This document shows, piece by piece, positions 8,404 to 54,009 of a DNA stretch of 64,000 bases (position 1 is its first letter; each line of letters opens with the position of its first letter). Made by a program: the position numbers and the translations under genes. The DNA lies in the IMG/VR virus record IMGVR_UViG_3300046513_000221, positions 62,001-126,000 of that record; one strand, 5' to 3'. The notes under the pieces are model-generated. The model was not told where the DNA came from, made no database searches, and was given only the letters and a program-made list of their open reading frames with translations.

Positions 8404-9006
8404 TTATTCAGCAGGTACGGCTTCGATGCAACCGTAGTCCTCCACCAACAGCTGGACCAGCTCACGTGGGTTCACGTATTTGCCGTTGCCGTTCATGAAG
8501 ATACTGTCGGCATGCTCCAGAACCTTGCGTTCTTTGGCGATGAACTCGTCGTCGCGTCCACGAACAGCACGGTCCTCTTCGGACAGCTCTTCGTAGCGCA
8601 CGTCGAGGCCGATGACGATGACGTTGTAGTCGGCGTACAGGTTGCCGGGACCGCACTTGCTGCGCAGGTCTTCAATGCCTTCTTCAGCGAGGATGATCGT
8701 CGCGATCTTACCATCGGTAAAGTCTGGCAGGGATCCGTACATGTCCTTGAACAGCGAGTCCGGCTTGGTGCCGATCACGCCGATCAGGCGATCTTGCAGC
8801 AGCGGGAAGGTCTTGCGCTGCACGAAGATGTACGGGTTGCCGAAGGTCTCGCCGGGGCGCATGCTGCGCGTGGAGAACTGTTGCAACTTGTAGAACAGCT
8901 CGGGATAGTCCTTGACCAGATTCTGTTCGAGGGTACTCTTCCCGGAGCCAGACACGCCCACGAGGGCGAGGATGATCGGATTTACGATTTTGTATTGGGT
9001 CTTCAA
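8404..9006 (-). CDS. Guanylate-kinase-like nucleoside monophosphate kinase
   Basis: P-loop GVSGSGKST, STRSMRPGE..G..Y.FV and YG motifs of the Gmk family; TTG start with GGAG RBS. Confidence 0.8.
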   Translation of the reverse strand: MKTQYKIVNPIILALVGVSGSGKSTLEQNLVKDYPELFYKLQQFSTRSMRPGETFGNPYIFVQRKTFPLLQDRLIGVIGTKPDSLFKDMYGSLPDFTDGKIATIILAEEGIEDLRSKCGPGNLYADYNVIVIGLDVRYEELSEEDRAVRGRDDEFIAKERKVLEHADSIFMNGNGKYVNPRELVQLLVEDYGCIEAVPAE

Positions 9007-16246: not shown

Positions 16247-16816
16247 CTAACGACCGTCGTTTCCTTCCATTTCGTGACTGAAGTGATCCTCACGTTCCTC
16301 CGCATCGCGCCGCGCCTGCTCGGCAGCGAGACGACGACGGTCGAACTCAGGATCCACATCGACCACTTGGATCAGCTCGATCCCGTGGCTACTCAGGAAG
16401 TCGTTGGAGATGCCCCCTTTGAACTCTTCCAAGAAGTAGATACGCTTCACCTTGGCGCGCTTCAGCCTCGCGGCGCATCGCATGCATGGTGAGTGCGTGA
16501 TGTAGAGTGTTGCCCCTTCCAGATTCTTTCCGGATTCCATCGCACGAGCCAGCAGCTCATCCTCCGCGTGGAGGGTGGTGTCTAGCGTACGACCGTTCTC
16601 ATCGACGGTGCTTGGATCGGAGTCGTCGGCGTTGTAGTTCCAACCGTAGCCGAGAACAGAGCCGTCTTGTCCGGTCGCGATCACACCGACTTTCTTGTCA
16701 GGAGCAGGGGAACGCTTAGCCATCTGGATAGCGATGTTAAGCCATGTATTCAAAGCTGTAGCCGGTTTCGACTTCTGATAGATGAGGAGTTCCTCGTCAG
16801 GCAGTGCTTGTTCCAT
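16247..16816 (-). CDS. dCMP deaminase (ComEB-like)
   Basis: KVG..GYGWN, HAE, LYITHSPCMRCA Zn-deaminase motifs. Confidence 0.9.
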   Translation of the reverse strand: MEQALPDEELLIYQKSKPATALNTWLNIAIQMAKRSPAPDKKVGVIATGQDGSVLGYGWNYNADDSDPSTVDENGRTLDTTLHAEDELLARAMESGKNLEGATLYITHSPCMRCAARLKRAKVKRIYFLEEFKGGISNDFLSSHGIELIQVVDVDPEFDRRRLAAEQARRDAEEREDHFSHEMEGNDGR

Positions 16817-17095: not shown

Positions 17096-18946
17096 TCAGT
17101 ACAGAAGGTCAATGATTGAGGATTGGTTCTTCTGGAACAAGTTGTTTTCGACAACCTGATCCATACGTTCAAACGCCAGAGTGATCGCCGCAGACGGGTG
17201 GTTCACAAGAGCATTGGTCAGCTTCAGAAACTTGATGTTCTCCACGTCAGCGAAGTTCTTCGGACGTTCCTGAATGTTGTTTGCATCACGGATCAGCTCG
17301 CGCAGAATCAACTCGATCGTCACGGAGCTGGAGCGAATGTTGGATTTCTCCAGCAGACTCAGGAACTCCGGCAGCAGCAGGTGGATGCTATACTCGTTGA
17401 GCAGAGCCTCGCTTTCCAGCAGCTTGATGATCTTCTTCAGCGGCGTGATCAGCTCGGTGTTCTCGATGTTGATGCGGAACACCTCGTTGTCTTCGTAGAT
17501 GTCGAGGATGTTGTCGGAACGGTAGGTGCTGATCTTGTCCTGCACCAAATCGAGGAAGATCTCCTTGCCCTCTTCGAAGTCGAACTCGATCTGACGGTCG
17601 TCGTCGAGAACGATGATTTTGTTGCTCGAAAGCTCTTCTTCGTCGCCGGTCTTCTGGATGTTCTGTACGTTCACCCGGAAGTTCCGCTTCGCGATGAGGC
17701 TGGTCTTGTCGATGTAGAAGTACTCTTCCAGCCCCGGTGGCAGCTCGATCTTCTCAGGATTGATCTGCAGCAAGTGCTTAGACGACAGCAGCATCTGAGT
17801 CAGCTGTTCGGTCAGGTTCAGCACGCCAGCGATACCGATGTGGAACGGATTGACGCGGTGCAGCTGACCGTAGCAGGTACGACAGATTTCGCCGTTGCCG
17901 AGGTGGCAAGTCGCCGGTGAGCGCAGTTTGATGTGCTTCCCGATCATCTCCATGCCGTGCTTACTCAGGGTCTTCAGACCCTTCTTGGTGTAATGGAAAC
18001 GACCGTGCAGACGCTTCAGCGAGTCCTTGGTCTCGATCTGCATCATCACGTAGTCCTCGGAACCGCAGTCCTCCACATCGGAGAGCTTCTGGTTGAGGAC
18101 GAGCAGCAGCAGCTTACGTGACGTGTAACCGGCACGGCGAACCTGCAGAGCATTGGTGATCAGCGCCTTACGAGCACCCATCGCCGAGACGAAGTAATCC
18201 ATCTCGTTACGCATGCCCTGATACAGGTTGGTGTTGACGCAGTGCGGATAGATCGCACTCGAAATGATTTCCGGCTTGTAGCCGATATTGCAGAATACTT
18301 GCTGAAACTGACCGACCGAGATGGCCAAGATCAGATTGCGATAGCAGTTGTTGGTATCGCGGGAAATCTCCTCAAGCAAATCGCGGGTCGCGGTCTTGAT
18401 GGAGTCAACGGTCTCGAAGTATCCTTGATTCTCGTCAACCTTGAAGGCGAGCAGGTCGGCTACGCGCTTGTTTTTCTCCGACAGCTTCAGCATGTCGTAG
18501 ATGTTGACTGAGTTACCAGCGGACTGGTTGATCTCGAACGTGAGATCTGCGAACTCCTCCAAGGAGTACGCGATGATGCTCTTGAGGTCATCGATATCGA
18601 CGGTGTCGTCTTCGATGCTTTCCTCGATGGTCTCGCTGAAGTATTTCTTAACTGCGGAAGCGACGTTGTCGTCCGGGCCGCAGATCAGAATGTCGCGCAT
18701 CTCAACAGGACGCGCCAACAGGAAGCGAGACTTGATCAGGATCAGCGCGATCACCAACTGGCCGAGGTTGATCTCGAATGGATCACTGCCGTCCTTGTTG
18801 ATGGAACACACAAAACTTTGCTTACGGTTGACGAAGTCCTTGGACATCAGTGTCTTTCCGTTGTTGCAGAAGTCGATCAGGCCTTCAGGGTTTTTTTCTT
18901 GCACGAAGTCTAGGAGCATCGCCTTCGATTTTTGCTGTTTTGCCAT
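17096..18946 (-). CDS. RNA polymerase beta' C-terminal subunit (probably non-virion RNAP)
   Basis: Bridge helix DYFVSAMGARKALITNALQVRRAGYTSRKL, Zn site DCG..RSPATC..EICRTCYG, trigger loop EQLTQMLLSSKH. Confidence 0.92.
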   Translation of the reverse strand: MAKQQKSKAMLLDFVQEKNPEGLIDFCNNGKTLMSKDFVNRKQSFVCSINKDGSDPFEINLGQLVIALILIKSRFLLARPVEMRDILICGPDDNVASAVKKYFSETIEESIEDDTVDIDDLKSIIAYSLEEFADLTFEINQSAGNSVNIYDMLKLSEKNKRVADLLAFKVDENQGYFETVDSIKTATRDLLEEISRDTNNCYRNLILAISVGQFQQVFCNIGYKPEIISSAIYPHCVNTNLYQGMRNEMDYFVSAMGARKALITNALQVRRAGYTSRKLLLLVLNQKLSDVEDCGSEDYVMMQIETKDSLKRLHGRFHYTKKGLKTLSKHGMEMIGKHIKLRSPATCHLGNGEICRTCYGQLHRVNPFHIGIAGVLNLTEQLTQMLLSSKHLLQINPEKIELPPGLEEYFYIDKTSLIAKRNFRVNVQNIQKTGDEEELSSNKIIVLDDDRQIEFDFEEGKEIFLDLVQDKISTYRSDNILDIYEDNEVFRINIENTELITPLKKIIKLLESEALLNEYSIHLLLPEFLSLLEKSNIRSSSVTIELILRELIRDANNIQERPKNFADVENIKFLKLTNALVNHPSAAITLAFERMDQVVENNLFQKNQSSIIDLLY

Positions 18947-19130
18947 TTTCGTACCTCGTCTTTTGCACTAGGAAGGAGATCTGCAATCCCTTGGACTTCA
19001 CCTTCAGTTGAACCTTGGAAGTGGCTTTTCCGCCATTTCCCCTTTTGCTGATCGGTTTTGCTTCTTCCGGGATGTCCGGACTCAGCGCATTACCAACCTT
19101 TGATACGAAATCCATTACACCGCTTTTCAT
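18885..19130 (-). CDS. Small basic hypothetical protein
   Basis: MKSGVMDFVSKVG.. after a GGGGA RBS; overlaps the beta'C start by 62 nt. Confidence 0.4.
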   Translation of the reverse strand: MKSGVMDFVSKVGNALSPDIPEEAKPISKRGNGGKATSKVQLKVKSKGLQISFLVQKTRYENGKTAKIEGDAPRLRARKKP

Positions 19131-19276
19131 ACAGTCCCCATGATTGGAATCATAGGGTGTGGCTAAGAGCCGTAGCCAGCACATCACCGCCTAAGCAGAT
19201 TTAGCGCCTCGTTCGGTTTTACACCTTAGTCATCCCTGCACCCTTGCGTTCAAAAAAATATGACGTTGTCATATAA

Positions 19277-19314
19277 ATACCTCCGCTATACCCGTGAGGA
19301 TATAGCGGAGTTAT
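19277..19314. terminator. Hairpin terminator
   Basis: CTCCGCTATA..TATAGCGGAG after the stop at 19344. Confidence 0.65.
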
Positions 19315-19343
19315 TCAGTCTTATTCAGACTTTCGGTGCAGGT

Positions 19344-20288
19344 TTACTTCTTTTTGCCAACGACCTTCTTGGCAGCGGGAGTGAACTCGTCGCCGTTCCA
19401 GGTGCCCAGGATGAAGTTGCCTTCATCGTCGAACGCGCCTTCTTCGAACTCGCCAGCGTCGTTGACTTGACCTTTCGAGGTGGTCTTGTCGAAGTACAGC
19501 GAGAACGAAACCTTGGTGTGCGGCGACACCATGGTGTGGTACGGCGTGGCGACCTTGTCCAGACCCGGATTCGGTGCGTACACGCGCGCTTCAGCCTGAC
19601 GGCGCTTCGACTTGACGCCGAGGAACTTCAGGTCGTTGTTGACCAGCACTTCGCCCATGGTTTCTTCCATGGTCTTCAGGATGGCGGCGGTCATGGCCTT
19701 GGTCGGAGGAGCGATGTCCTTCTCGACCAGCTTCTCGTGCAGCAGGTCGACGAACATGTCGGCTGGCATCCACTGGCCCGGTTCCAGAACGCGCTGTTCC
19801 TTCTGCTCTTTCTTGGCCCAGCCGCCGCCTTTCTTGGCAGCAGGAGCGGCAGCGGCAGCAGGTGCTTTCTTCGCGGCAGGTGCCGGAGCGGCTTTAGGCG
19901 CGACCTTGGCGGCAGGAGCGGCAGCTTTAGGAGCGACTTTACCGACGACCTTCTTCGGTGCAGGTGCGGCCACTTCTTCTTCTTCGGCCTCGCCGCCTTC
20001 TTCGCCTTCTTCTTCGCTTTGCTCTTCTTCTTCGGTTTCTTCAACCGGAGCAGGAGCGGCTTTCTTCGGAGCGACCTTACCGACGACCTTCTTCGGTGCC
20101 GGTGCAGCCACTTCTTCTTCTTCGGCTTCGCCGCCTTCTTCGCCTTCGGTCTGCTCTTCTTCTTCGGTTTCTTCAACCGGAGCAGGTGCTGGCTTCTTCA
20201 CAACACCCTTCGGTGCGACCTTGGCTGCAGGTGCTGCTGCGCCACCGGCTTTTTTCGCTGCCAACAGTTCTTTCATCGTCTTTGCCAT
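19344..20288 (-). CDS. Divergent HU/IHF-fold protein with a long alternating basic/acidic N-terminal tail
   Basis: C-domain ADMFVDLLHEKL..TKAMTAAILKTMEETMGEVL..LKFLGVKSKRRQAEARVY.PNP..HTMVSPHTKVSF follows the HU pattern; ATG 20288 has a GGAG RBS. Confidence 0.75.
   Translation of the reverse strand: MAKTMKELLAAKKAGGAAAPAAKVAPKGVVKKPAPAPVEETEEEEQTEGEEGGEAEEEEVAAPAPKKVVGKVAPKKAAPAPVEETEEEEQSEEEGEEGGEAEEEEVAAPAPKKVVGKVAPKAAAPAAKVAPKAAPAPAAKKAPAAAAAPAAKKGGGWAKKEQKEQRVLEPGQWMPADMFVDLLHEKLVEKDIAPPTKAMTAAILKTMEETMGEVLVNNDLKFLGVKSKRRQAEARVYAPNPGLDKVATPYHTMVSPHTKVSFSLYFDKTTSKGQVNDAGEFEEGAFDDEGNFILGTWNGDEFTPAAKKVVGKKK
19925..20198 (-). repeat. Tandem duplication of ~135 nt (APAPVEETEEEEQ..GEEGGEAEEEEVAAPAPKKVVGKVAPK x2)
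   Basis: Near-identical DNA copies inside the HU-like gene. Confidence 0.85.
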
Positions 20289-20370
20289 GCTAAACTCCAT
20301 TTTGGTTTGGTTAAAATACAACTTGCTTATCGATAAGTAGCTGAAATGCCGAATGAATCTTTCTCAACGG

Positions 20371-20387
20371 ACACCATAAGAATATAT
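20371..20387 (-). promoter_or_regulatory. Early/middle-type promoter variant ATATATTCT-N5-TGT
   Basis: Two mismatches to consensus; a late motif is also present at 20424-20435. Confidence 0.5.
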
Positions 20388-20520
20388 CCACGTTTTCCGA
20401 GTCAAAGTTTTCCATTCGACATCTAGCATACTGTTGGGAGCCGATGAGTCTAATCACTTTCGAAAATGCGATATAGTTCATCGATCCCTTGACTTGGATG
20501 TAATTAAGCTATGAAACTCT

Positions 20521-21552
20521 TCAGATTTTTTCTTCCTGAGCGTCGAGCAGCTTCTGGAAGAGGAATCCTACGATTACGCGAGCCATCGCAATGCTACGAT
20601 GATTCCACTTCAAACGGTCCTCACCACTCACCATCGACAGCGGAACCTCGCGGTGCATTTCGCGGTCGTAGATAGCGAAGATGGAATTGTAACCGAAATC
20701 GCGCCAGAGCGTTTCGAGGAACGAGTCGTCGCCATACTGCTGGGTGGTCGGTACGAAGAGACGACCGTACATGTGGCCGACGGCGTGGTGCATGATCTCG
20801 CCGTTCTTGGCGATGCTCGCGGTCGTCACGAAGTTACCGGTCGCCATGTAGCGCTTGAAGAACGGATCAGAGAAACCGATCGAGCCGCTCAGCTTTTCGC
20901 GGATGGCCTCGGAGATGATCACCTTGTTGACGAAGTCCTTCATGTTCTTGCGGAACTTCGACAGCGATTTCTCTTCCGTCGCTTTACGCGTGAGGAACCG
21001 GTCCAGTTCTGGGAACTGGCGACTGATGCGGTCGTAGACGCCCTCGTACAGGATATCGTCCTGCACGCGAGCCGAGTGTACGCCCGGACGACCGTTGAGG
21101 ATGTCCACGCAGATGCCGGAGTCCTCAGCGAGGATGTACTTATTCTCGTTCTGGAACATACTGGACAGACCGCGACTCTTGATGAAGCAGTTGTCGAGGA
21201 AGGTCTGACCGGTCTCGTCCTGTTCCGCGTAGGCGTCACCTTCCAGCACGCCGAACGTCAGGATCCCGGTGGTGATCCCGGCCAGCTGGGTGTTCACCTT
21301 CAAGAAGTTGTTGAACTCGTCGATCTTGCCGTGGTTGCCGGTACCGAACGAGATGTGCCACTTGCCGTTCTTCGGATTCTCCAGCCACGCACGGGTGGAC
21401 AGGGTTCCGAAGTTATTCTGGATGACATCGATCTGGTGCTTGAGCTCCTTCACGCTATTCTGGAAGGTGCCGATCTTGTCGTGTTGCTGGTCCACCGACA
21501 CAAAGCCTATGGATAGCGTGTCTTTCACAAAGTCTACTGGTGTTTCATTCAT
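20521..21552 (-). CDS. Ham1/RdgB-family nucleoside triphosphate pyrophosphatase (divergent)
   Basis: TGNHGK, ETGQTFLDNCFIKS, AEDSGICVDILNGRPGVHSAR, FGYNSIF, NHR. Confidence 0.88.
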   Translation of the reverse strand: MNETPVDFVKDTLSIGFVSVDQQHDKIGTFQNSVKELKHQIDVIQNNFGTLSTRAWLENPKNGKWHISFGTGNHGKIDEFNNFLKVNTQLAGITTGILTFGVLEGDAYAEQDETGQTFLDNCFIKSRGLSSMFQNENKYILAEDSGICVDILNGRPGVHSARVQDDILYEGVYDRISRQFPELDRFLTRKATEEKSLSKFRKNMKDFVNKVIISEAIREKLSGSIGFSDPFFKRYMATGNFVTTASIAKNGEIMHHAVGHMYGRLFVPTTQQYGDDSFLETLWRDFGYNSIFAIYDREMHREVPLSMVSGEDRLKWNHRSIAMARVIVGFLFQKLLDAQEEKI

Positions 21553-21668
21553 TTCTTCTTTTCCGTCTGTTTCGACCGACCCTAACTAGAGAGTAGGCCC
21601 AGATGCCAGTCCCGCCACGCACCGAGCGAAGGGGGATTTGGGGGAAGTTCGCTATCGCTACCTTCCCC

Positions 21669-21796
21669 TATATTTTAAATAATCATAAATAATAATAAGA
21701 AAATGGTTATTATACCATTTATCTTCTTATCTTATAAAAGAATCTCCTAACGTTTAGTACGTTAGGAGATTACTTATAATTATTAAATAGTAAAAT
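21669..21796. other. AT-rich island with a 13-bp perfect palindrome, candidate replication origin
   Basis: Strongly A/T-rich stretch in a GC-rich genome; AATCTCCTAACGT-ttagt-ACGTTAGGAGATT. Confidence 0.45.
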
Positions 21797-21827
21797 CGCA
21801 CGAGGGTTGAAGGATGTCTTTCGATAT

Positions 21828-21844
21828 CCGTCCTTATCATATAT
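21828..21844 (-). promoter_or_regulatory. Early/middle-type promoter ATATATGAT-N5-CGG
   Basis: Motif copy pointing into the AT island and the Ham1 gene. Confidence 0.6.
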
Positions 21845-21878
21845 TCGTAATCAACATCTTAAAGTTTGACGCACGAGC

Positions 21879-21890
21879 AACAGTAGAATA
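21879..21890 (+). promoter_or_regulatory. Late-type promoter AACAGTAGAATA
   Basis: AACA-N6-TA ~30 nt upstream of the beta gene. Confidence 0.75.
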
Positions 21891-21921
21891 ATACCAGTCA
21901 TCCACATTTGGAAAGACCATC

Positions 21922-24900
21922 ATGCTAGTCCAGCTCGACAAGATCCTCAATTCGCGGATTTATTTCTCATCGACCCTGCAGTGCAACCCATCTACCGACT
22001 CCGGCAAGTACTACGCTTTGGCGTACGACCCGGCTGACGAGAACGGGTTCAACAACCTGCTGAAATCGATCAAGTTCATGCCAAAGGGTAAGGAGTACGT
22101 GTACTACCCGGCATCGATCTTCAACCCTACATCGTTCGCTCCGATGCCATCCACCAAGGCAAAGGCAGCGTTCTACGAGTGGCTCGACAAGAACCATCCC
22201 GCATCGCACACCAAGATGAACCAGCTGACGCTGAGCGAATCACAGCAAGCCGACCACAACCCGGTGCTGTTGAACCTCGCGTCGTACTTCACGGTTCTCG
22301 ATCCGTACGCGGAGCAACACAAGAACTCCGCCTCCAACAAATACAAGTACTTCAAGATGGTTCTGGCAAAGATCCTGCCGAAGTACTCCGAATTCTCGAA
22401 GGAGAAGATGAACCTGCTGATCGACATCAGCGGCACCGTCACCAGCTCCTTCCTCTTCTTCATCCTGTACGGTCTGCGTCACGACTACGAGGCGATGACC
22501 AAGGCATTCGAGGGCATCAACGTGATCTTCGTGGACGGTCCTCACGGCCTGTTCATGAAGCCTGATCTGGCTGATCGCAAGAAGGTCCAGTCCAATCTGA
22601 ACCTGATCGCCAAGATGCTCAACATGAGCCGCAACTTCGATCGCGATGCGATCATGAAGGACAAGGACGTAAGCATCACCGACGAGAGCGTCGCAGTGTC
22701 CTCCGACAAGGTGGACCAGAAGACCATCGATGCAGCCATTGCTGGCTTCGATATCGATCGCACCACCGAGCTGGAGGGACAGACTCCCGAGCAGATCATG
22801 GCCGCGAAGACCAAACGGATCTCCATCGCCGAGAAGGATCCGAGCGACATCGCGTCCGTGACGGTCGCCAACGAGTCCGACCTCGAAGAGATTCTCGGTA
22901 GCGTCGCCACCGATGACTTCCAGAAGGTAGCCAAGGCCAATCAGGACTTCCTGAACAAGTACGCTCCTGTACAGGAGAAAGCGATCTCCAAGGCGCGTGC
23001 TGAGGCGGAGAAAGCCTTCACCGATAGCAAGCTTTCCATCACCAAAGCTGTCGATAGTTCCGTGATGAACTCGAACGTGAAGTCGTCCGTTATTGCAGCT
23101 CTGACCTCCTCGTACTATCGCAAGATCTACAAGAAGGACATCCTGAGCATCTTCACGAACCTGAACAACGATCCTGATCATCCGGTCGTGATCACCAGCT
23201 TCGAGATGAAAGACAACTCCGATCCGCTGAACATGCTGGATGAGCTGTCCGTGCAGTTCCTCGACAAGAACGGCAAGCGCCACACCTTCACGGTGGACGT
23301 GCCTAAAGTCTCCCACGATGGCTTCCTGTACCTCAATGGCAACAAGAAGTTCGTGACGAAGCAAGCCGCGCTGCTGCCGATCATCAAAGAGGCTCCGAAC
23401 CGAGTCCAGATCACCACCAACTACAAGAAGACCTTCCTGTATCGCAAGAACGACAAGACCTCCGGTATCGTCGATCGCATCTTGAAGACTCTGGTTGGCA
23501 AGAAGATCGACGGCGTGAAGCAGATCTCCGGTAACAGCTTCGCTTCGAACCTGCCGTACAACGTCAGCATCCCTTACAACCTCTTTGGTCGTCGCCTTTA
23601 TAGCGTCGAGATCCAGCAGGGTACCAGCGGTGGCAACGTCCTGCATCTGGTGTTCAACCAGAATAAGATCCGTGAGGACATGAAGGATCTTGGATTCGAC
23701 ATCGAGAAGCTCGGCGATCATGCAATTCCAGTCGCCTTCCGCTGCATCAACAACAAGATCGAGACGGTCTACTGCGAGATGAACACCCGCTCCGGGAAGA
23801 TCATCGGTGCGTGGGATCGTACAGGCAAGCCGAAGCAGGAAAACTACAAGAACATCACTCAATTCATGGCTGACCAGATCCGCAACAGCGGCAACTCGTC
23901 CCTGATCGAGGCTTTCAACAGCACCTCCGCAGGTAAGTCACTCGGTCAGACCGAGATCCGGCTGGCCGGTCGCATGATGTCGCTCGGCGTGCTGCTCTGC
24001 TTCTACCGTGGCATGTTGCCGCTGCTGGAACAGTATGGCATCAAGTACACTGTCTCCGACAAGGGTGGTCGTGCAACCGATACGCAGACCATCCTGCGTT
24101 TCAAGGATGTGTCACTCATCATCGATGCCGAGGGAGACACGACCAAGGAACTGATCGTCAACGGCTTCTACTACCTGAACACCAAGGAGTACAACCTCGA
24201 CGACGCAGGTCAGCGCGGCGCAGTCTACATCGAGTACTTCGGCGAGTACACCGGTTCCCGGAACACCGCCAAGGCCGTGCTGAACTTCGAGTCGGCGATG
24301 ATCGATCCGATTACGTTGGAGGTGCTGAAGGATCTGCACCTGCCGACCACCTTCGTCGATCTGCTGCTGTACGGTAACACCATGCTCGGCGACTTCACGC
24401 ACAAATCGAAGAACGACATGTCGAACTTCCGTACCCGTGACGCGGAGGTCGTGTCCGTGGCGGTCTACAACACCCTGATCACCGCGTTCAACGAGTACAA
24501 ACGTACCGTGAAGACCGGTGTGGTCACCTCGATCTCGGCTCCTCGCGATGCCGTGACGAAGACTCTTCAGACCTACCAGAACATCGAGGGCTACTCGACG
24601 CTGTCACCGTTTCTGGAGATCCAGAACAAGGCTAAGACCACGTTTAAGGGTCCGTCGGGTCTAAACTCCGACGACAGCTACACTGCGGATATGAGAGCAT
24701 TCGACGAGTCCATGGTCGGGGTTTTCGGTATCTTTACCCCCGTTTCTGCACAGGTGGGTATCGCACGCTCCATGACCCTGAACCCACGCATCAACCATGT
24801 GCGTGGCTATCTGGAAAAGAAGAACGTCAATGACATGAACATGGACGAGTTGTACGCCCCCGGCGAGCTGCTCAACATCTTCGTGGCGTCCCACTCCGAC

Positions 24901-26109
24901 CCGATGCGTATCTGCATGGCGACGACTCAGGGCGGTCACATCATCGCGACCAAGGTCCAGCACAACTACCTGATCGGTACCGGCATCGACAAGACGCTGT
25001 CCCATCTGGTTGGTCAGGACTTCGCCTTCAAGGCATCGGAGGACGGTGTGGTGTCCAAGGTCGATGAGACCAACAAGCTCGTCTTCCTGAAGTACGCCTC
25101 CGGCGAGACGACCGCGATCGACATCAGCGACAAGCCAGCCAACAACTCGGCTGGTGGCTTCTACATGAAGAATCAGCTGGAATTGACTGATGGTCTGAAG
25201 GTAGGCTCGAAGTTCAAGGTCGGTCAAATCCTCGCGACGAATCGCCAGTTCTTCAAGGAGGACATGGATGGCTCGCACGGCTTCGCTGCCGGTCGCCTGA
25301 CCAAGGTCGCCCTGATGTGCCTGACGACCACCTACGAGGACTCGATGCCGATCACCGACACCGTGCGCCGCGAGATGGCCTCGACGATCATCTCGGAGAA
25401 GGAGACCATCCTCAAGGAGAACTCCCGCATCCACTCGATCGCCAAGGAAGGTCAGTATATCAACATCAACGAGCCGCTGGTCATCTTCGAGGAGATCGGC
25501 GATACCGAGAAGGCCGCACTGAGTGCCGTAGAGAAGGCTTCCAACCCGGACTTTGGTAAAGGTTCGGAGCTGGAGTATCTCGGCAAGAACGTGGTCAAGT
25601 CGAAGTACGCCGGTCTGATCACTAACATCAAGGTCTACTACAACTGCGATCTGGAGTCGCCAACGCTCGAACCAACTCTGAAGGAGTATCTGCAGGGCTA
25701 CATCGAGTCGAACAAGCGTCGCTCCGGTCTGCTGAAGGGCATCAAGGCTGACGAGCTGATCGAACAAGCATCGACCGAGCGGATCATGAAGGACAAGATC
25801 CTCGGCAATGAGATGCAGGGCGTGCTGATCGTGTTTTACATCCAGCACGAGGAAGATTCTTCTATCGGTAACAAGTTGACCTTCTTCTCCGCAGCCAAGG
25901 GCATCGTGTCCGAGGTGATCCCGGACGAGTTGGCTCCGTATACTGACTACCGTCCGAAGGATCCTATCGAGGCGATCCTGAGTCCGATGTCGCTGATCAG
26001 TCGTAACGTACCCGACCTGATGCTGACGGGTCTGTCGAACCGCGTGATCGTGGAACTGCGCAAGCAGGTTCTTGAAGATCTCGGTCTCATCCCCGTCGCT
26101 ACTGCTTGA
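21922..26109 (+). CDS. RNA polymerase beta subunit, large N-terminal part (probably virion RNAP)
   Basis: VPKVSHDGFLYLNGNKKFVTKQ, FKGPSGL..FTPVSAQVG, HSDPMRICMATTQ, TYEDS, GNKLTFFSAAKG, LSPMSLISRN; lacks the C-terminal clamp region; late promoter fits packaging. Confidence 0.92.
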   Translation: MLVQLDKILNSRIYFSSTLQCNPSTDSGKYYALAYDPADENGFNNLLKSIKFMPKGKEYVYYPASIFNPTSFAPMPSTKAKAAFYEWLDKNHPASHTKMNQLTLSESQQADHNPVLLNLASYFTVLDPYAEQHKNSASNKYKYFKMVLAKILPKYSEFSKEKMNLLIDISGTVTSSFLFFILYGLRHDYEAMTKAFEGINVIFVDGPHGLFMKPDLADRKKVQSNLNLIAKMLNMSRNFDRDAIMKDKDVSITDESVAVSSDKVDQKTIDAAIAGFDIDRTTELEGQTPEQIMAAKTKRISIAEKDPSDIASVTVANESDLEEILGSVATDDFQKVAKANQDFLNKYAPVQEKAISKARAEAEKAFTDSKLSITKAVDSSVMNSNVKSSVIAALTSSYYRKIYKKDILSIFTNLNNDPDHPVVITSFEMKDNSDPLNMLDELSVQFLDKNGKRHTFTVDVPKVSHDGFLYLNGNKKFVTKQAALLPIIKEAPNRVQITTNYKKTFLYRKNDKTSGIVDRILKTLVGKKIDGVKQISGNSFASNLPYNVSIPYNLFGRRLYSVEIQQGTSGGNVLHLVFNQNKIREDMKDLGFDIEKLGDHAIPVAFRCINNKIETVYCEMNTRSGKIIGAWDRTGKPKQENYKNITQFMADQIRNSGNSSLIEAFNSTSAGKSLGQTEIRLAGRMMSLGVLLCFYRGMLPLLEQYGIKYTVSDKGGRATDTQTILRFKDVSLIIDAEGDTTKELIVNGFYYLNTKEYNLDDAGQRGAVYIEYFGEYTGSRNTAKAVLNFESAMIDPITLEVLKDLHLPTTFVDLLLYGNTMLGDFTHKSKNDMSNFRTRDAEVVSVAVYNTLITAFNEYKRTVKTGVVTSISAPRDAVTKTLQTYQNIEGYSTLSPFLEIQNKAKTTFKGPSGLNSDDSYTADMRAFDESMVGVFGIFTPVSAQVGIARSMTLNPRINHVRGYLEKKNVNDMNMDELYAPGELLNIFVASHSDPMRICMATTQGGHIIATKVQHNYLIGTGIDKTLSHLVGQDFAFKASEDGVVSKVDETNKLVFLKYASGETTAIDISDKPANNSAGGFYMKNQLELTDGLKVGSKFKVGQILATNRQFFKEDMDGSHGFAAGRLTKVALMCLTTTYEDSMPITDTVRREMASTIISEKETILKENSRIHSIAKEGQYININEPLVIFEEIGDTEKAALSAVEKASNPDFGKGSELEYLGKNVVKSKYAGLITNIKVYYNCDLESPTLEPTLKEYLQGYIESNKRRSGLLKGIKADELIEQASTERIMKDKILGNEMQGVLIVFYIQHEEDSSIGNKLTFFSAAKGIVSEVIPDELAPYTDYRPKDPIEAILSPMSLISRNVPDLMLTGLSNRVIVELRKQVLEDLGLIPVATA

Positions 26110-26835: not shown

Positions 26836-27098
26836 TCATGTCTCTCCAAACAGCACAACTCGGTGGCGTAGTCATCGACGACAGTATTTCCAAGAAGGTC
26901 TTCTATGGTATCCGTTTCCAACAGGCAACGGGCCACCTGAACATCGAGGAGATCTCCAAGGGTTCCGATCCGATCGCCCTGCCACAGGACGGTGTGATCG
27001 ACCCTACCGATTACAAACAATGGCTCTGGACTAACTCCAAGCTTTCCTTTCAATGGTCCACGACAAAACCGGGCCACCTCGAACTGGTGATTAAATGA
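26832..27098 (+). CDS. Hypothetical virion protein
   Basis: 88 aa, 4-nt overlaps with both neighbours. Confidence 0.65.
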   Translation: MIMSLQTAQLGGVVIDDSISKKVFYGIRFQQATGHLNIEEISKGSDPIALPQDGVIDPTDYKQWLWTNSKLSFQWSTTKPGHLELVIK

Positions 27099-29236
27099 AT
27101 ATTATCGATCTGGGTAAACTCCGCTTCCACTTCGCCGGTCAATTCGACGCTGGCGCGAACTACGAGTACAACGACATCGTCAAGTACGGCGGTAATGTGT
27201 ACTGCTACATCTATGCCCTGAAAGAACCGGGCCACCTGCCGACCGATACCAAGTACTGGGATCTGATGGTCGAGGGTATCGACTTCCAAGGCGTCTTCTC
27301 GCCGACGACCGCCTACAAGGTCGGTCAAGGTATCGCCTACGGCGGTAAGGTCTACATCGCCATCGCCGACTCGCAAGGTCAAATTCCTCCGAACGCTGCC
27401 TTCTGGTCGCAGTTCGTGGATGGCGTGCAGTATGAAGGTGTGTGGTCGAATCTGACCGCCTACCAGAAGAACGACATGGTGAAGTACGGTGCTTGCATGT
27501 ACATCGCCAAGGTTGACAACACCAATGCCAATCCGGTCGATCCGACCAAGTGGGACAAGATGGTTGACGGTATCTCGGCGCAGAGCGTCTGGAACTCCGC
27601 TACCGCTTACGTTCCCAACGACGTGGTCGCCTACGGTGCCAATCTGTACCGCGCTCTGGTGAATAACACCAACATCGTTCCGGGTTCGGACCCTGCCAAG
27701 TGGGATCTGTACATCGGCGGCGCATCGTACAAAGGTGTATACAGTGCTGCAGCCGTTTATCTGTGCGGTGAGATTGTCGCCTACGGTGCCAACCTGTACC
27801 GTGTGAAGACGACCGTGCAGTCCGTGACTGCTGGTGTGCTGCCAACCGACAACACCAAGTACGACCTGTTCCTGTCGGGTGTGACCTTTAGCGGTGTATG
27901 GTCGTCCGCGAACGCGTACACCATCGGTTCGCTCGTGTCCTACGGTGCCAACCTGTACCGCGCCAAGGCCGACTCGCCAATCGCAACGCTGCCAACCGAC
28001 ACCTCGAAATGGGATCTGTTGAACACCGGTTTCCGCAACACCGGCCCATGGACGACCGCAGCCACTTATCTGCTGAACGACGTAGTGTCGTATGGTGGTA
28101 ACACCTTCATCTGTCTCGTACCTCATGCTTCGGCTGCATTTAACGCCGATCTGGCGGCTGCTAAATGGCAGAAGTTCAATGGTGGCGTACGCTATCGTGG
28201 TACGTGGGCGACCGGTGTGTCGTACCTGAAGGACGATATGTTGACGGATGGCATCTCGCTGTTCATCGTTCTCAACGACTACGTTTCCGGTGCAACCTCC
28301 GCCGCCGATATCGCCGGTGTCAACCTGCAGATGACTGCACGCGGTGCATCCGGAGTGCCAGTTTTCACTCTGGCCGACAAAGACAAAACCATCACCAACG
28401 ATGGCGTGAACCTGATCTGGACTCCTCGCGATGTATTCGCCGGTCGTGAGATCATCGACGGCGTAACGTTGGCCCCGATCGTGGCTTCGATGTTCTCCGT
28501 ATTCTCGCGCCAAGGTGCTTACAGCTCCATGGCGACTGGTAATACTTCCCCTGCTGCACCACAGCTGATTCCGGCTGGTTCGCAGGGTGCTACGGATGCG
28601 ATGCAGCTGCTCAACATCGCGATGGGCGACGGTTACGGCGCGTCCGGTAGCGCCACCCAGCCATGGCTGATGGATGATACCGGTGGCATGAACCGTCGTC
28701 TCGAATACGCAGCCGGTCTCCGCTTGGGTCACCGCCGTACGTTCTACAGTATGAACAACCCGACGTCTTATCCGCCGATTGGTATTCGCATCATGCCAGT
28801 ACGGAATAACTCGGCGGTTTCGAAGAACATCACGCTTAACTTTGCGCATTCAGCGTACAGTGAAGGTGCAGCTCTCTATGTCGGTACCCCTACCACGGGT
28901 CTGTATAGCGCTGCAGCTGCCGTAGCTTGGACTGTTCCCTACACCTACAGTGGTTCCATTTATGAGACGACTGGCTCGACCACGATCACCATCCCGCCGA
29001 ACACGACCGTCCTGATCATGCTGGCTAACACCATGCAGTATCAGACGACCAACATGTTCCAGGATATCAACTACTTCTATGGCCTGAATACGACGTTCTC
29101 GGATCCGGCCATCCAAGTGGATATGCGTATGCTCACCATGCTGGCACATGCTCGCCTCCCGGCTAACTACAGCTACTCGTCCAACGAAGCGCACAAGGTC
29201 TACAACCAGTGCGCTAAAATCTACGGAGATCGTTAA
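27095..29236 (+). CDS. Tail fibre with tandem carbohydrate-binding-like (CBM5/12-type) repeats
   Basis: IIDLGKLRF start; about 8 repeats of G.W....AY..ND.V.YG...Y.A....P.D..KWD. Confidence 0.8.
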   Translation: MNIIDLGKLRFHFAGQFDAGANYEYNDIVKYGGNVYCYIYALKEPGHLPTDTKYWDLMVEGIDFQGVFSPTTAYKVGQGIAYGGKVYIAIADSQGQIPPNAAFWSQFVDGVQYEGVWSNLTAYQKNDMVKYGACMYIAKVDNTNANPVDPTKWDKMVDGISAQSVWNSATAYVPNDVVAYGANLYRALVNNTNIVPGSDPAKWDLYIGGASYKGVYSAAAVYLCGEIVAYGANLYRVKTTVQSVTAGVLPTDNTKYDLFLSGVTFSGVWSSANAYTIGSLVSYGANLYRAKADSPIATLPTDTSKWDLLNTGFRNTGPWTTAATYLLNDVVSYGGNTFICLVPHASAAFNADLAAAKWQKFNGGVRYRGTWATGVSYLKDDMLTDGISLFIVLNDYVSGATSAADIAGVNLQMTARGASGVPVFTLADKDKTITNDGVNLIWTPRDVFAGREIIDGVTLAPIVASMFSVFSRQGAYSSMATGNTSPAAPQLIPAGSQGATDAMQLLNIAMGDGYGASGSATQPWLMDDTGGMNRRLEYAAGLRLGHRRTFYSMNNPTSYPPIGIRIMPVRNNSAVSKNITLNFAHSAYSEGAALYVGTPTTGLYSAAAAVAWTVPYTYSGSIYETTGSTTITIPPNTTVLIMLANTMQYQTTNMFQDINYFYGLNTTFSDPAIQVDMRMLTMLAHARLPANYSYSSNEAHKVYNQCAKIYGDR

Positions 29237-29970: not shown

Positions 29971-30819
29971 TTAATGTTTCGTGTGTACTTCGCTTCGCAG
30001 AGCTACACCACGCGAACGTACGTGGTAGTAGATCTGTCCAACGCCCACATTGTGCTTTGTTGCGATATTCTGGATCGTAAGCTTTTCTTCCGGATCGGAG
30101 TAGTCAGCGATCAAAGCTTTGATCGCCGATTCTTCAATCAGAGGATTTTTTGCTTTGTAACCTTCAGAATGATTCTTAACAACGCGAGAATTTTTCTTCG
30201 GTGCTTCGCTAGGATACAAGTCGAAGTAGTTGATGTACCTTCCCTCAATCTTGGTAAAACTGATTGGGAAGATTGCACGAATCGCTACCGAGATACCGAT
30301 GCAGTTGAGCTTTTTGCTGATCGTGTAAATGCGGTTACGCATTTCCGAAACGCTTTGCGGCCAATTTGGGTCATTGACAAATTTTGGGAAGCCCCAGTTC
30401 AAGTGCTTCAGCATATCTTCGGAGTTCTTCGTGACCGGACCGACAGCATCGTCCATCATTCGATGAATTGCTTTCAAGAAGACATCTTTGCTCGGAACAG
30501 GAGCCTTAATGTTTTCCATACCGGTGATGATGTTTTCCCCAAGTACAATTTTCTTTACTTGCACTTGAGGAATAGTCGTCTTAGGCCTCGGCGGCAGTGC
30601 CTTGATCTCTTCTTTTTTTCTTGGAGCCGAAAGAATCTTCCTTTTTCCTTCAGGAAACTTCTCTTCAAGCTGATCAGGGGCTGTGGCTACATGAGCTACT
30701 GGCGGGGCTGACTCGATGCTACTCTTGAAAAGTTCGAAGAGCTCATCGAGGGTGTTGTATTTAGTGTACGTCCCATCATCGAACGTCAAAAGTATTCCAT
30801 TAACCTTTTTATTTTCCAA
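29971..30819 (-). CDS. Putative DNA-binding protein with a C-terminal HTH
   Basis: LTIQNIATKHNVGVGQIYYHVRSRGV; TTG start with GGGAG RBS; AT-richer codons. Confidence 0.65.
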   Translation of the reverse strand: MENKKVNGILLTFDDGTYTKYNTLDELFELFKSSIESAPPVAHVATAPDQLEEKFPEGKRKILSAPRKKEEIKALPPRPKTTIPQVQVKKIVLGENIITGMENIKAPVPSKDVFLKAIHRMMDDAVGPVTKNSEDMLKHLNWGFPKFVNDPNWPQSVSEMRNRIYTISKKLNCIGISVAIRAIFPISFTKIEGRYINYFDLYPSEAPKKNSRVVKNHSEGYKAKNPLIEESAIKALIADYSDPEEKLTIQNIATKHNVGVGQIYYHVRSRGVALRSEVHTKH

Positions 30820-30859
30820 GTCTGTGCTCCCAAAGTTTAAACAACTTATCTACAAAATC

Positions 30860-30876
30860 TCAAAATAATTATATAT
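30860..30876 (-). promoter_or_regulatory. Early/middle-type promoter ATATATAAT-N5-TGA
   Basis: Motif copy. Confidence 0.7.
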
Positions 30877-30957
30877 AAACAATTCTCTTTCAGTTACGTT
30901 TTCAGTGCACAATTAGTGATACAACTTATAAATAATATGAACTCCATCTAATATAAA

Positions 30958-31512
30958 ATGACACAGCTAGACTACGAGCAATTCCCGGCAGATAGCCTGG
31001 AAATTGCAATGAATCTCATCGAGGATCTGGGTTTCTCCGAGAAGGAACTCGCCTCTATGGAGGCAGACATCATCAACATCCTCACCGAGGAGAACTACAC
31101 GACCCTCGAACTCACCTACTACGGTGAGCCGAAGGCACAGGCTCGCGCCCGGTCGTCCGGTCTAACGGGATTTTTCTATGATCCGAGTCAATCCCTGAAG
31201 AGCTGGCTGGTGGAGCAGATCACTTCTCAGCTCCCTCGCGGCTTCACTCTCGTGGACACTGAGATCCACATGGAGTGCAAATTCTACAAAGGGATGCCGA
31301 AAAGTGCGAGCAAGAAGGCCAAGGTCATGATGGAGCTCGGAGTCATCCGTCCCACGACAAAGCCTGACAACGACAACTATCTGAAGCTGGTACAGGATGC
31401 CCTGAACCGCGTCCTGTACACAGACGATGCCGTCATCACGAAGGTCTCGGCGGAGAAGTACTTTTCCTGCAAACCTCGTGCAACGATCAAGCTCCGATTC
31501 AAGCGCAAATGA
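30958..31512 (+). CDS. rusA: RusA-family Holliday junction resolvase
   Basis: GEPKAQARAR, KPDNDNYLKLVQDALN..YTDDAVI. Confidence 0.9.
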   Translation: MTQLDYEQFPADSLEIAMNLIEDLGFSEKELASMEADIINILTEENYTTLELTYYGEPKAQARARSSGLTGFFYDPSQSLKSWLVEQITSQLPRGFTLVDTEIHMECKFYKGMPKSASKKAKVMMELGVIRPTTKPDNDNYLKLVQDALNRVLYTDDAVITKVSAEKYFSCKPRATIKLRFKRK

Positions 31513-31561
31513 ACATCGGGATAGCAACAACTCCCCATCTTGAATTCCTCTTCTTTGGAAT

Positions 31562-31601
31562 CCCTCTAGGGCCGAAAGGCTTCTAGAGGGCTTTTTTTTT
31601 T
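31562..31601 (+). terminator. Intrinsic terminator
   Basis: CCCTCTAGGGCC gaaa GGCTTCTAGAGGG plus T10. Confidence 0.85.
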
Positions 31602-31642
31602 CTGAAGGACAAGTTATTAGATGAAACAACAAGGAGCCTTAG

Positions 31643-53926: not shown

Positions 53927-53933
53927 TGTCGAT

Positions 53934-53970
53934 TATTAAGGTGTTTCCTATGATGCGCAACACATTAGTA
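53934..53970. promoter_or_regulatory. Back-to-back late-type promoters (- 53934-53945; + 53959-53970)
   Basis: AACACCTTAATA and AACACATTAGTA. Confidence 0.7.
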
Positions 53971-54009
53971 ATCGAAATCAAGCAACTTTCTAGCATAGGG
54001 GCTACTAAC

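What the first reader, a model, noticed from the sequence alone, without database searches (positions are those of the whole stretch)
20521..21552. Ham1/RdgB pyrophosphatase with a rewired base-recognition pocket
Seen: the phosphate-binding and catalytic motifs are intact (TGNxGK, EDSG, PGVHSAR), but the base-specificity motifs differ: FGYDP is FGYNS, SHR is NHR, and the preceding conserved Lys is Arg. There is also a large insertion and an N-terminal extension. Established: those residues select ITP/XTP in RdgB/ITPase, and the related Maf fold hydrolyses dTTP/UTP. Inference: it may remove a canonical dNTP (for example dTTP) to favour a substituted base. Together with dCMP deaminase (16247) and a divergent NMP kinase (8404), this would fit a non-canonical DNA pathway.
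Basis: partly seen in the sequence, partly recalled or inferred. Interest (0 to 1): 0.6.

Follow-up and report, generated by a model that had tools for sequence, protein, structure and literature searches.

The report
Phage dTTP-removing Ham1 enzyme (Dtt)
This gene most likely encodes a phage enzyme that destroys dTTP so the virus can build its DNA with uracil instead of thymine; a distant relative in Yersinia phage phiR1-37 was shown to do this in 2025, so it is a new member of a known kind.

Summary
Window 20521-21552 (-) encodes a 343-aa Ham1/ITPase-fold protein. Its phosphate and catalytic motifs are intact (TGNHGK, EDSG, PGVHSAR). Its base-pocket motifs are changed (FGYNS, NHR, Arg for Lys). 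It also has a 64-aa N-terminal extension and two insertions.

The phage is a complete 263-kb jumbo phage. Its nearest cultured relatives by terminase are PBS1/AR9, Staphylococcus S6 and Yersinia phiR1-37, which are the known uracil-DNA phages.

The gene sits in the same block as phiR1-37 g100: RNAP beta | Ham1 | structural protein | RNAP beta' | deaminase. Li et al. 2025 (PMC12697855) showed that g100 is a dTTP pyrophosphatase (Dtt). They also showed that the neighbouring deaminase is a dCTP deaminase that makes dUTP.

P0001 and Dtt are only 26% identical. They align collinearly, share the indels and share FGYN plus NHR. All 12-13 long-form proteins carry this signature and none of 68 ordinary RdgB-like proteins does.

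The genome has no credible thymidylate synthase, dUTPase, UDG or alternative dTMP phosphatase.

It is a new, distant member of the Dtt family and marks a likely high-GC uracil-DNA phage.

The parts
20521..21552 (-). Dtt-like Ham1-fold nucleoside-triphosphate pyrophosphatase gene (343 aa, P0001)
   Evidence: Pfam PF01725 at E 8e-20. AF2 model pLDDT 87.8. VIA Z 18.1, rmsd 2.5 A over 195 aa to Ham1 3tqu_A and Z 17.6 to RdgB. 26% identity, collinear, E 2e-11 to phiR1-37 Dtt.
21361..21552 (-). N-terminal extension, aa 1-64 (two helices at aa 29-58; aa 1-15 disordered in the model), absent from ordinary RdgB
   Evidence: Alignments; secondary structure. It is conserved in the long-form clade and present (83 aa) in phiR1-37 Dtt.
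21325..21342 (-). TGNHGK phosphate-binding motif (N73, K76 = RdgB N10, K13)
   Evidence: invariant in both clades.
21067..21126 (-). EDSG (catalytic Asp144 = RdgB D69) through PGVHSAR
   Evidence: D144, S145, G146, P156, S160 and A161 are invariant in both clades. The Asp is not replaced by His as it is in KomB.
20857..21066 (-). Enlarged helical lobe after PGVHSAR (aa 163-232), holding about 45 residues that ordinary RdgB lacks
   Evidence: Alignment; helices 172-179, 182-193 and 197-224 in the model. phiR1-37 Dtt has it too.
20701..20748 (-). 16-aa insertion (aa 269-284, one short helix) just before the FGYN motif
   Evidence: shared by all long forms including phiR1-37 Dtt.
20683..20700 (-). 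D-FGYNS base/sugar-pocket motif. D285 replaces Gly and N289 replaces the Asp of FGYDP. F286, G287 and Y288 are retained.
   Evidence: N is 12/12 in long forms against D 68/68 in short forms. At the position before it, D is 11/12 against G 65/68.
20596..20616 (-). R-L-K-W-N-H-R motif. R313 replaces the Lys (RdgB K177) and N317 replaces the Ser of SHR. H318 and R319 are retained.
16247..16816 (-). Zinc deaminase (189 aa), syntenic homologue of phiR1-37 Dcd (a dCTP deaminase); the proposed dUTP supply
   Evidence: Pfam dCMP_cyt_deam_1 at E 1e-17. 34% identity, E 4e-23 to phiR1-37 g103. Activity of g103 from PMC12697855.
8404..9006 (-). Guanylate-kinase-like P-loop kinase (200 aa); a candidate (d)NMP or dUMP kinase, function not shown
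   Evidence: Pfam Guanylate_kin at E 1e-6 over the N-terminal 55 aa only. Far below the NCBIfam guanylate-kinase cut-off, 34.9 against 160 bits. 49% identity to phiR1-37 g056.
21922..26109 (+). Synteny anchor: divergently transcribed multisubunit RNAP beta-like subunit (1395 aa)
   Evidence: 39% identity over the full length to phiR1-37 g099, a virion protein.
17096..18946 (-). Synteny anchor: RNAP beta'-like fragment (616 aa)
   Evidence: Pfam RNA_pol_Rpb1_5 at E 3e-6. Same position as phiR1-37 g102 and in L004, L002 and the P0005 contig.
19344..20321 (-). Synteny anchor: Ala/Lys/Glu-rich repeat protein (325 aa) between Dtt and RNAP beta'
   Evidence: 34% identity to phiR1-37 g101, a virion structural protein.

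Best explanation
The gene encodes a Dtt-type enzyme, a Ham1/ITPase-fold Mg-dependent nucleoside-triphosphate pyrophosphatase whose base pocket has been retuned from hypoxanthine/xanthine to thymine. It would hydrolyse dTTP to dTMP + PPi during infection and largely spare dUTP. The nearby zinc deaminase, probably a dCTP deaminase, would make dUTP. Together they shift the pool so that the phage polymerase builds uracil-containing DNA. Shown here: the fold, the intact catalytic and phosphate residues, the clade-specific substitutions and indels, membership of the clade that contains the assayed phiR1-37 Dtt, the conserved gene neighbourhood, and the absence of thymidylate synthase, dUTPase and UDG genes. 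Inferred: the substrate preference of this particular protein, the uracil content of this phage's DNA, and which residues read thymine. My guess is that N289, N317 and R313/D285, together with the aromatic residue before NHR (W316), reach further into a pocket that must hold a smaller pyrimidine with a 5-methyl group.
For: (1) It is a Ham1-fold enzyme with all catalytic and phosphate residues kept. (2) Terminase relatives at 31-49% identity are Bacillus Goe21/BpSp/AR9/PBS1, Staphylococcus S6-like phages and Yersinia phiR1-37; all other hits are at or below 28%. PBS1/2, AR9, S6 and phiR1-37 are the U-DNA phages listed in the review PMC8150378. (3) The gene order is the same as phiR1-37 g099-g103. 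Pairwise identities are RNAP beta 39%, structural protein 34%, deaminase 34% and Ham1 26% over 293 collinear residues, E 2e-11. (4) g100 = G4KK39 was shown to be a dTTP pyrophosphatase and G4KK42 a dCTP deaminase (PMC12697855). (5) In a maximum-likelihood tree the long forms, including phiR1-37 Dtt, are separated from ordinary RdgB by one branch with 99/100 support. The profile search shows a gap from at least 236 bits for long forms to at most 80 bits for ordinary ones. (6) FGYN is 13/13 and N-H/S-R is 13/13 in long forms, against FGYD and SHR in about 70 short forms. (7) The block Ham1-X-RNAP beta'-deaminase-helicase recurs on every long-enough contig: L004, the P0005 contig, L002/L003 and phiR1-37. 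(8) The complete genome (direct terminal repeats, 263,413 bp) has no ThyA, no dUTPase, no UDG and no NT5C-type or YfbR-type Dtm. The only ThyX hit is 13.9 bits, E 0.047.
Against: Identity to the only assayed family member is low (26%), and phiR1-37 Dtt sits on a very long branch, so specificity could have drifted. The two residues that the literature names as the key hypoxanthine readers, Arg of SHR and Phe of FGY/W, are retained. This is also compatible with residual dITP/XTP activity. The published assay panel lists dNTPs, and I found no dITP or XTP test in the parts I read. The K->R change is ambiguous in phiR1-37 Dtt, where a 5-aa insertion places a Lys at position -4. Sequencing cannot tell U from T, so dU-DNA is not shown for this phage. 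Known U-DNA phages have low GC (28-33%), whereas this genome is 55% GC.
Confidence: 0.7

Rival explanations
1. It is an ordinary house-cleaning dITP/XTP pyrophosphatase (RdgB/ITPA function) that keeps deaminated purines out of phage DNA and RNA, decorated with phage-specific extensions.
For: Pfam and fold place it in Ham1. Arg319 and Phe286, the main hypoxanthine readers named in PMC5075207, are kept. Other large phages (Lak, Acinetobacter MD-2021a) carry ordinary rdgB genes.
Against: It fails the NCBIfam RdgB equivalog model, 64.8 bits against a cut-off of 145.35, whereas the Salmonella RdgB control scores 232.5. It lacks the SHR and FGYDP signatures that are invariant in 68/68 ordinary members. 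The one assayed member of its clade prefers dTTP.
Confidence: 0.13
2. It is a pyrophosphatase aimed at another nucleotide, for example dGTP or a ribonucleotide such as UTP or TTP. It would serve a different pool-shaping purpose, and this phage's DNA is canonical or modified in another way.
For: phiR1-37 Dtt has measurable dGTPase activity, 0.4 /s. 26% identity leaves room for drift. The genome's GC content is unlike that of known U-DNA phages.
Against: The signature residues are invariant across the whole clade, including Dtt. The deaminase partner is conserved next to it. No thymidylate synthase or other base-modification gene was found in the targeted searches.
Confidence: 0.08
3. It is a counter-defence enzyme that destroys the dITP alarm signal of Kongming-type systems. 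Those systems are triggered by phage nucleotide kinases such as the one at 8404.
For: Kongming signals with dITP, which is sensed by KomB, a catalytically dead Ham1 protein (bioRxiv 10.1101/2024.12.20.629578). KomB structures are among the fold matches at Z 13-14. This phage encodes a kinase and an active-looking Ham1.
Against: This is pure inference. The only published anti-Kongming factors are dNMP phosphatases. The pocket signature differs from dITP-binding Ham1 proteins. The tight linkage is to a deaminase and RNAP genes, not to anti-defence genes.
Confidence: 0.05
4. It is an inactive, nucleotide-binding or structural Ham1 derivative that uses the extension and insertions to bind another phage protein such as the RNAP.
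For: It lies between two RNAP subunit genes in all relatives. It has extra domains. Potyviral Ham1 proteins are reported as partners of viral polymerases (PMC8893687, abstract).
Against: All catalytic and metal/phosphate residues are invariant. The phiR1-37 homologue is enzymatically active and is not flagged as a virion protein, whereas its neighbours g099 and g101 are.
Confidence: 0.03

Closest known systems
Dtt_PhiR1-37 (Yersinia phage phiR1-37 g100, UniProt G4KK39), a HAM1-family dTTP pyrophosphatase (Li et al. 2025, PMC12697855)
   Same: Same clade and same length class (358 against 343 aa). Same N-terminal extension and two insertions. Same FGYN and NHR substitutions. Same position between RNAP beta and structural protein/RNAP beta'/deaminase.
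   Different: Only 26% identical. Dtt has FGYN-P, F-NHR and a 5-aa insert before NHR, where the window protein has FGYN-S and W-NHR. The host phage is 55% GC against 33%. The window protein has not been assayed.
RdgB / ITPA / Ham1 (XTP/dITP diphosphatase; PDB 1k7k, 2q16, 2j4e, 3tqu, 4bnq)
   Same: Same fold: Z 17-18, rmsd 2.5-2.9 A over the whole ~195-aa chain. Same catalytic and phosphate residues N10, K13, E16, E41, N49, K53, D69, S70, G71, P81, S85, A86 and R87, plus F154, G155, Y156, H182 and R183.
   Different: About 140 extra residues. The discriminating changes are D157N, S181N, K177R, G153D, A54S and L172V. It falls below the RdgB equivalog cut-off.
Maf (YhdE) dTTP/UTP pyrophosphatases
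   Same: Same superfamily fold and a pyrimidine-triphosphate substrate (PMC3899018, abstract).
   Different: Much weaker structural match: Z 7-9, rmsd 3.5-3.9 A. No Pfam Maf hit. dTTP recognition would have arisen independently inside the Ham1 branch.
Dtm_PBS1 (NT5C family) and Dtm_DSS3_VP1 (YfbR HD family) dTMP phosphatases of other dU-DNA phages
   Same: Same proposed role, removing dT nucleotides so that dU is incorporated.
   Different: Unrelated folds that act on dTMP rather than dTTP. Neither family is present in this genome.
KomB, the dITP-sensing dead Ham1 of the Kongming defence system
   Same: Ham1 fold, Z 13-14.
   Different: KomB has His in place of the catalytic Asp and does not hydrolyse dITP. 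The window protein keeps EDSG.

Membership tests
Ham1/ITPase superfamily (Pfam PF01725) | Score above Pfam's gathering cut-off | tested here: met
   71.9 bits against 22.5, E 8e-20.
Ham1/ITPase superfamily (Pfam PF01725) | Ham1 alpha/beta fold over the whole domain | tested here: met
   AF2 pLDDT 87.8. Z 18.1, 2.5 A, 195 of 197 residues of 3tqu_A.
Ham1/ITPase superfamily (Pfam PF01725) | Catalytic Asp and phosphate/metal ligands (RdgB N10, K13, E16, E41, K53, D69) | tested here: met
   N73, K76, E79, E113, K125 and D144 are invariant.
RdgB/ITPA XTP/dITP diphosphatase (equivalog) | Score above the NCBIfam TIGR00042 / NF011397 equivalog cut-offs | tested here: not met
   64.8 against 145.35 bits and 64.3 against 234 bits. 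The Salmonella RdgB control scores 232.5 and 240.
RdgB/ITPA XTP/dITP diphosphatase (equivalog) | SHR signature and FGYDP/FGWDP motif | tested here: not met
   NHR and FGYNS here; SHR and FGYD are 68/68 in ordinary members.
RdgB/ITPA XTP/dITP diphosphatase (equivalog) | Preference for dITP/ITP/XTP over canonical NTPs | not testable with these tools
   This needs an enzyme assay.
Dtt (HAM1-type dTTP pyrophosphatase of dU-DNA phages) | Full-length collinear homology and common clade with Dtt_PhiR1-37 | tested here: met
   26% identity over 293 aa, E 2e-11. Other clade members are 28-30% identical to Dtt, E 1e-14 to 1e-21. Clade split has 99/100 support. Dtt is a long branch.
Dtt (HAM1-type dTTP pyrophosphatase of dU-DNA phages) | Shared derived characters: N-terminal extension, two insertions, FGYN, NHR | tested here: met
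   These characters are my own definition; the paper gives none.
Dtt (HAM1-type dTTP pyrophosphatase of dU-DNA phages) | Genomic linkage to a Dcd-type deaminase | tested here: met
   Three genes apart, as in phiR1-37. The same holds in L004, L002 and the P0005 contig.
Dtt (HAM1-type dTTP pyrophosphatase of dU-DNA phages) | dTTP hydrolysed much better than dUTP, dATP or dCTP | not testable with these tools
   Known only for Dtt_PhiR1-37.
Dtt (HAM1-type dTTP pyrophosphatase of dU-DNA phages) | Phage DNA contains dU in place of dT | not testable with these tools
   Indirect evidence only: no ThyA, ThyX, dUTPase or UDG genes, and the nearest cultured relatives are all U-DNA phages.
Maf (YhdE/YceF) pyrophosphatases | Pfam Maf match or closest structural neighbours | tested here: not met
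   No Maf hit at E<=1. Z 7-9 against 17-18 for Ham1.
KomB-type defensive HAM1 | Catalytic Asp replaced by His; association with a SIR2 KomC | tested here: not met
   Asp144 is retained. The neighbours are RNAP and structural genes.

The most novel reading that the evidence does not exclude
A small set of switch residues converts a purine-cleaning ITPase into a thymine-specific dTTPase. The set is D157N, S181N, K177R and G153D in RdgB numbering, an aromatic residue before NHR, and two lobe insertions. The FGYN/NHR long form would then be a sequence marker for an unrecognised, environmentally scattered lineage of uracil-DNA jumbo phages, including high-GC ones such as this 263-kb genome.
Probability: 0.45. 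Interest if true: 0.55.

Novelty: new member of a known kind. Interest (0 to 1): 0.4.

Why it matters
Uracil-for-thymine DNA cannot be seen in sequence reads, and only a handful of such phages are known. A reliable gene marker would let dU-DNA phages be predicted from metagenomes. This locus offers one: the long-form Ham1 with FGYN/NHR next to a Dcd-type deaminase, in a genome without thymidylate synthase, dUTPase or UDG. It extends the one assayed Dtt to about a dozen divergent natural sequences. That set pinpoints six positions separating dTTP-type from dITP-type enzymes, which gives a concrete mutagenesis and structure target. It does not reveal a new kind of system, because the function was published in 2025.

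Tried and rejected
- **Megablast against phage records.** Window 18000-24000 found nothing.
- **PHROGs.** It gave only an insignificant hit.
- **tblastn of P0001 against 50,697 phage records.** It found only ordinary rdgB-like pieces (Lak phages and others) and missed phiR1-37 at E<=1e-3. The link came from terminase relatives, the paper and a Pfam scan of the phiR1-37 record.
- **Weak ThyX hit in the genome.** L009:1075-1707 scores 13.9 bits, E 0.047, over 52 of 191 profile positions. I dismissed it as not significant.
- **Anti-Kongming dITPase idea.** I considered it after KomB structures appeared among the fold matches. It is kept only as a low-probability rival.
- **Maf-like origin of dTTP specificity.** Rejected on fold scores.
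- **Residue-level pocket modelling with dTTP.** Not possible: model coordinates are not exposed to the script box, and dTTP is not an offered ligand.

Full report
**What is there**

The ORF at window 20521..21552 (- strand) encodes 343 aa (P0001). Its codon-position GC (GC3 0.79) matches the other genes of the window.

It matches Pfam Ham1p_like (PF01725) at E 8e-20 and solved Ham1/RdgB proteins by sequence. An AlphaFold2 model built on 15 sequences is confident (pLDDT 87.8, pTM 0.85). The model superposes on whole Ham1/RdgB chains: Z 18.1, rmsd 2.5 A over 195 residues of 3tqu_A, and Z 17.6 to E. coli RdgB. Maf proteins reach only Z 7-9.

The 64-aa N-terminal extension, the enlarged helical lobe after PGVHSAR and a 16-aa insert before FGYNS are real and conserved in homologues.

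**Which changes are real signals**

I aligned 12 long-form proteins with 68 ordinary ~200-aa Ham1 proteins from the word searches plus Salmonella RdgB for numbering.

The phosphate-binding and catalytic positions are identical in both groups. These are RdgB N10, K13, E16, E41, N49, K53, D69, S70, G71, P81, S85, A86 and R87. F154, G155, Y156, H182 and R183 are also identical.

Only six well-conserved columns separate the groups:
- A54->S
- G153->D
- D157->N (12/12 against 0/68)
- L172->V
- K177->R (11/12 against 0/68)
- S181->N (12/12 against 0/68)

A review of human ITPA names the Arg of SHR (O6/N7 reader) and the Phe of FGW (excludes GTP) as the main specificity residues. It also reports that K172A even improves ITP selectivity (PMC5075207). 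Both main readers are kept here. The pocket is retuned around them rather than rebuilt.

**What phage this is**

The window is bases 62001-126000 of a complete IMG/VR virus record of 263,413 bp with direct terminal repeats, 55% GC. It encodes split multisubunit RNAP subunits, a T4-type terminase and a head-tail joining protein.

The terminase finds Bacillus phages Goe21, BpSp, AR9 and PBS1 (38-42% identity), Staphylococcus S6-like jumbo phages (31-34%) and Yersinia phiR1-37 (49% over part). Every other phage is at or below 28%. PBS1/PBS2, AR9, S6 and phiR1-37 are the U-DNA phages listed in the review PMC8150378.

**The decisive link**

Li et al. 2025 (Adv Sci, PMC12697855) studied phiR1-37. 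[quoted passage not shown]
- dTTP: kcat 2.2 /s, Km 108 uM.
- dGTP: 0.4 /s, 440 uM.
- dUTP: 0.1 /s, 145 uM.
- dATP and dCTP: little or no activity.
- dTMP: weak phosphatase activity.

They also showed that G4KK42 is a dCTP-specific deaminase and that phiR1-37 DNA is dU-DNA. By kcat/Km, dTTP is favoured about 30-fold over dUTP and 22-fold over dGTP.

A Pfam scan of the phiR1-37 record finds one Ham1 gene, g100. Its neighbourhood is g099 RNAP beta (divergent, virion protein) | g100 | g101 structural protein | g102 RNAP beta' part | g103 dCMP deaminase.

The window has the same order: 21922-26109(+) | 20521-21552(-) | 19344-20321(-) | 17096-18946(-) | 16247-16816(-). Pairwise identities are 39% (RNAP beta, full length), 26% (Ham1, 293 collinear residues, E 2e-11), 34% (structural protein) and 34% (deaminase, E 4e-23).

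phiR1-37 Dtt carries the same extension and insertions, and reads FGYN-P and F-NHR. The K->R change is ambiguous in Dtt, because a 5-aa insertion places a Lys at position -4.

**Size and coherence of the clade**

A word search with P0001 found eight long-form relatives (28-47% identity). A profile of 11 long forms added P0018 and P0017, which is 97.5% identical to phiR1-37 Dtt. Scores fall from at least 236 bits for long forms to at most 80 bits for ordinary RdgB-like proteins.

Two IMG/VR contigs carry another member. Among 50,697 cultured-phage records, only phiR1-37 has a full-length match to Dtt.

FGYN is present in 13/13 long forms and NHR in 12/13 (P0018 has NSR). About 70 short forms all have FGYD and SHR.

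A maximum-likelihood tree separates long forms, Dtt included, from ordinary ones with 99/100 support. Dtt is a very long branch and only eight outgroup sequences were used.

P0001 and Dtt both fail NCBI's RdgB equivalog model (64.8 and 46.2 bits against a cut-off of 145.35). Salmonella RdgB passes at 232.5.

The block Ham1 - structural protein - RNAP beta' - deaminase - helicase recurs on every contig long enough to show it: L004, the 10-kb P0005 contig, L002/L003 and phiR1-37. Shorter contigs show its beginning.

**Rest of the pathway**

The complete genome has:
- no ThyA;
- only an insignificant ThyX-like hit of 13.9 bits, E 0.047;
- no dUTPase-family gene;
- no UDG;
- neither type of dTMP phosphatase used by PBS1 or DSS3_VP1.

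The Ham1 protein is thus the only recognisable dT-nucleotide-removing enzyme. These controls detect the families in most reference genomes. Divergent phage versions could still be missed.

The guanylate-kinase-like protein at 8404-9006 matches the kinase model only over its P-loop end. It is 49% identical to phiR1-37 g056. A dUMP kinase activity is known from PBS1/2 infection (introduction of PMC12697855). Assigning it to this gene is only a guess.

**Mechanism**

- Shown: fold, intact catalytic apparatus, clade membership, signature and context.
- Taken from the literature: a clade member is a Mg-dependent dTTP -> dTMP + PPi enzyme that spares dUTP, and it works beside a dCTP deaminase to give dU-DNA.
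- Inferred: this protein does the same, and this phage has dU-DNA.
- Inferred: the longer or neutral side chains at N289, N317, R313 and D285, and the aromatic W316, adapt a purine pocket to a smaller 5-methyl-pyrimidine.

**Rivals**

- An ordinary dITP/XTPase. The retained Arg and Phe keep this alive, and I found no dITP test of Dtt in the paper sections I read.
- A different target nucleotide.
- An anti-Kongming dITP scavenger. KomB is a dead Ham1 that senses dITP. There is no direct support.
- A non-catalytic partner protein.

**Verdict**

The finding is a new, distant member of a family whose function has been known since 2025, not a new kind of system.

Its value is twofold. It marks likely uracil-DNA jumbo phages, here an unusually GC-rich one. 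It also supplies a natural sequence set that narrows the specificity switch to six positions.

I did not use the reads tools or the exhaustive protein search.

Noticed in passing
window 19344-20321 (-): A 325-aa Ala/Lys/Glu/Pro-rich protein built on 132-138-bp tandem repeats. It is 34% identical to phiR1-37 g101, an annotated virion structural protein. It has no Pfam family. It may be a basic/acidic DNA-associated virion protein.
   Followed up: partly
window 21553-21921: A 370-bp AT-rich divergent intergenic region between the Dtt-like gene and RNAP beta. It holds a perfect 13-bp-stem hairpin (21741-21771) and a sigma70-like site with an extended -10 on the - strand (21738-21709). These are consensus matches only, no more than shuffles give.
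   Followed up: no
window 8404-9006 (-): A P-loop kinase that matches guanylate kinase only over its first ~55 residues and falls far below the equivalog cut-off. It is 49% identical to phiR1-37 g056 'guanylate kinase'. It is a candidate for the unassigned dUMP kinase activity of U-DNA phages.
   Followed up: partly
window 16247-16816 (-): The best NCBIfam hit of the deaminase is a partial match to 'anti-phage dCTP deaminase' (48.9 bits, cut-off 400). Its L002 counterpart is 61% identical. Whether it acts on dCTP, like phiR1-37 Dcd, or on dCMP is open.
   Followed up: partly
window 27095-29236 (+): A 713-aa protein with two CBM_5_12 chitin-binding modules. This may hint at the environment or at host recognition.
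   Followed up: no
window 53926-60927 (+): A very long ORF of 2333 aa with coding-like GC3. I did not examine it.
   Followed up: no
window 30001-32000: A local GC dip to 0.476 against about 0.54 elsewhere. It lies beside a RusA resolvase gene at 30958-31512.
   Followed up: no
L009:1075-1707 (genome C1:37972-38604, outside the window): A 210-aa ORF with a sub-threshold ThyX (PF02511) match over 52 of 191 profile positions, 13.9 bits, E 0.047. I treated it as not significant, but it is worth a fold check because a ThyX would argue against dU-DNA.
   Followed up: partly
P0018 (metagenome protein, 292 aa): One long-form clade member reads W-N-S-R instead of W-N-H-R, so it loses the otherwise invariant His.
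   Followed up: no
whole genome G000: The genome is 55% GC. The reviewed U-DNA phages are 28-33% GC. No tRNA genes lie in the 64-kb window, whereas phiR1-37 has tRNAs just downstream of its deaminase.
   Followed up: no
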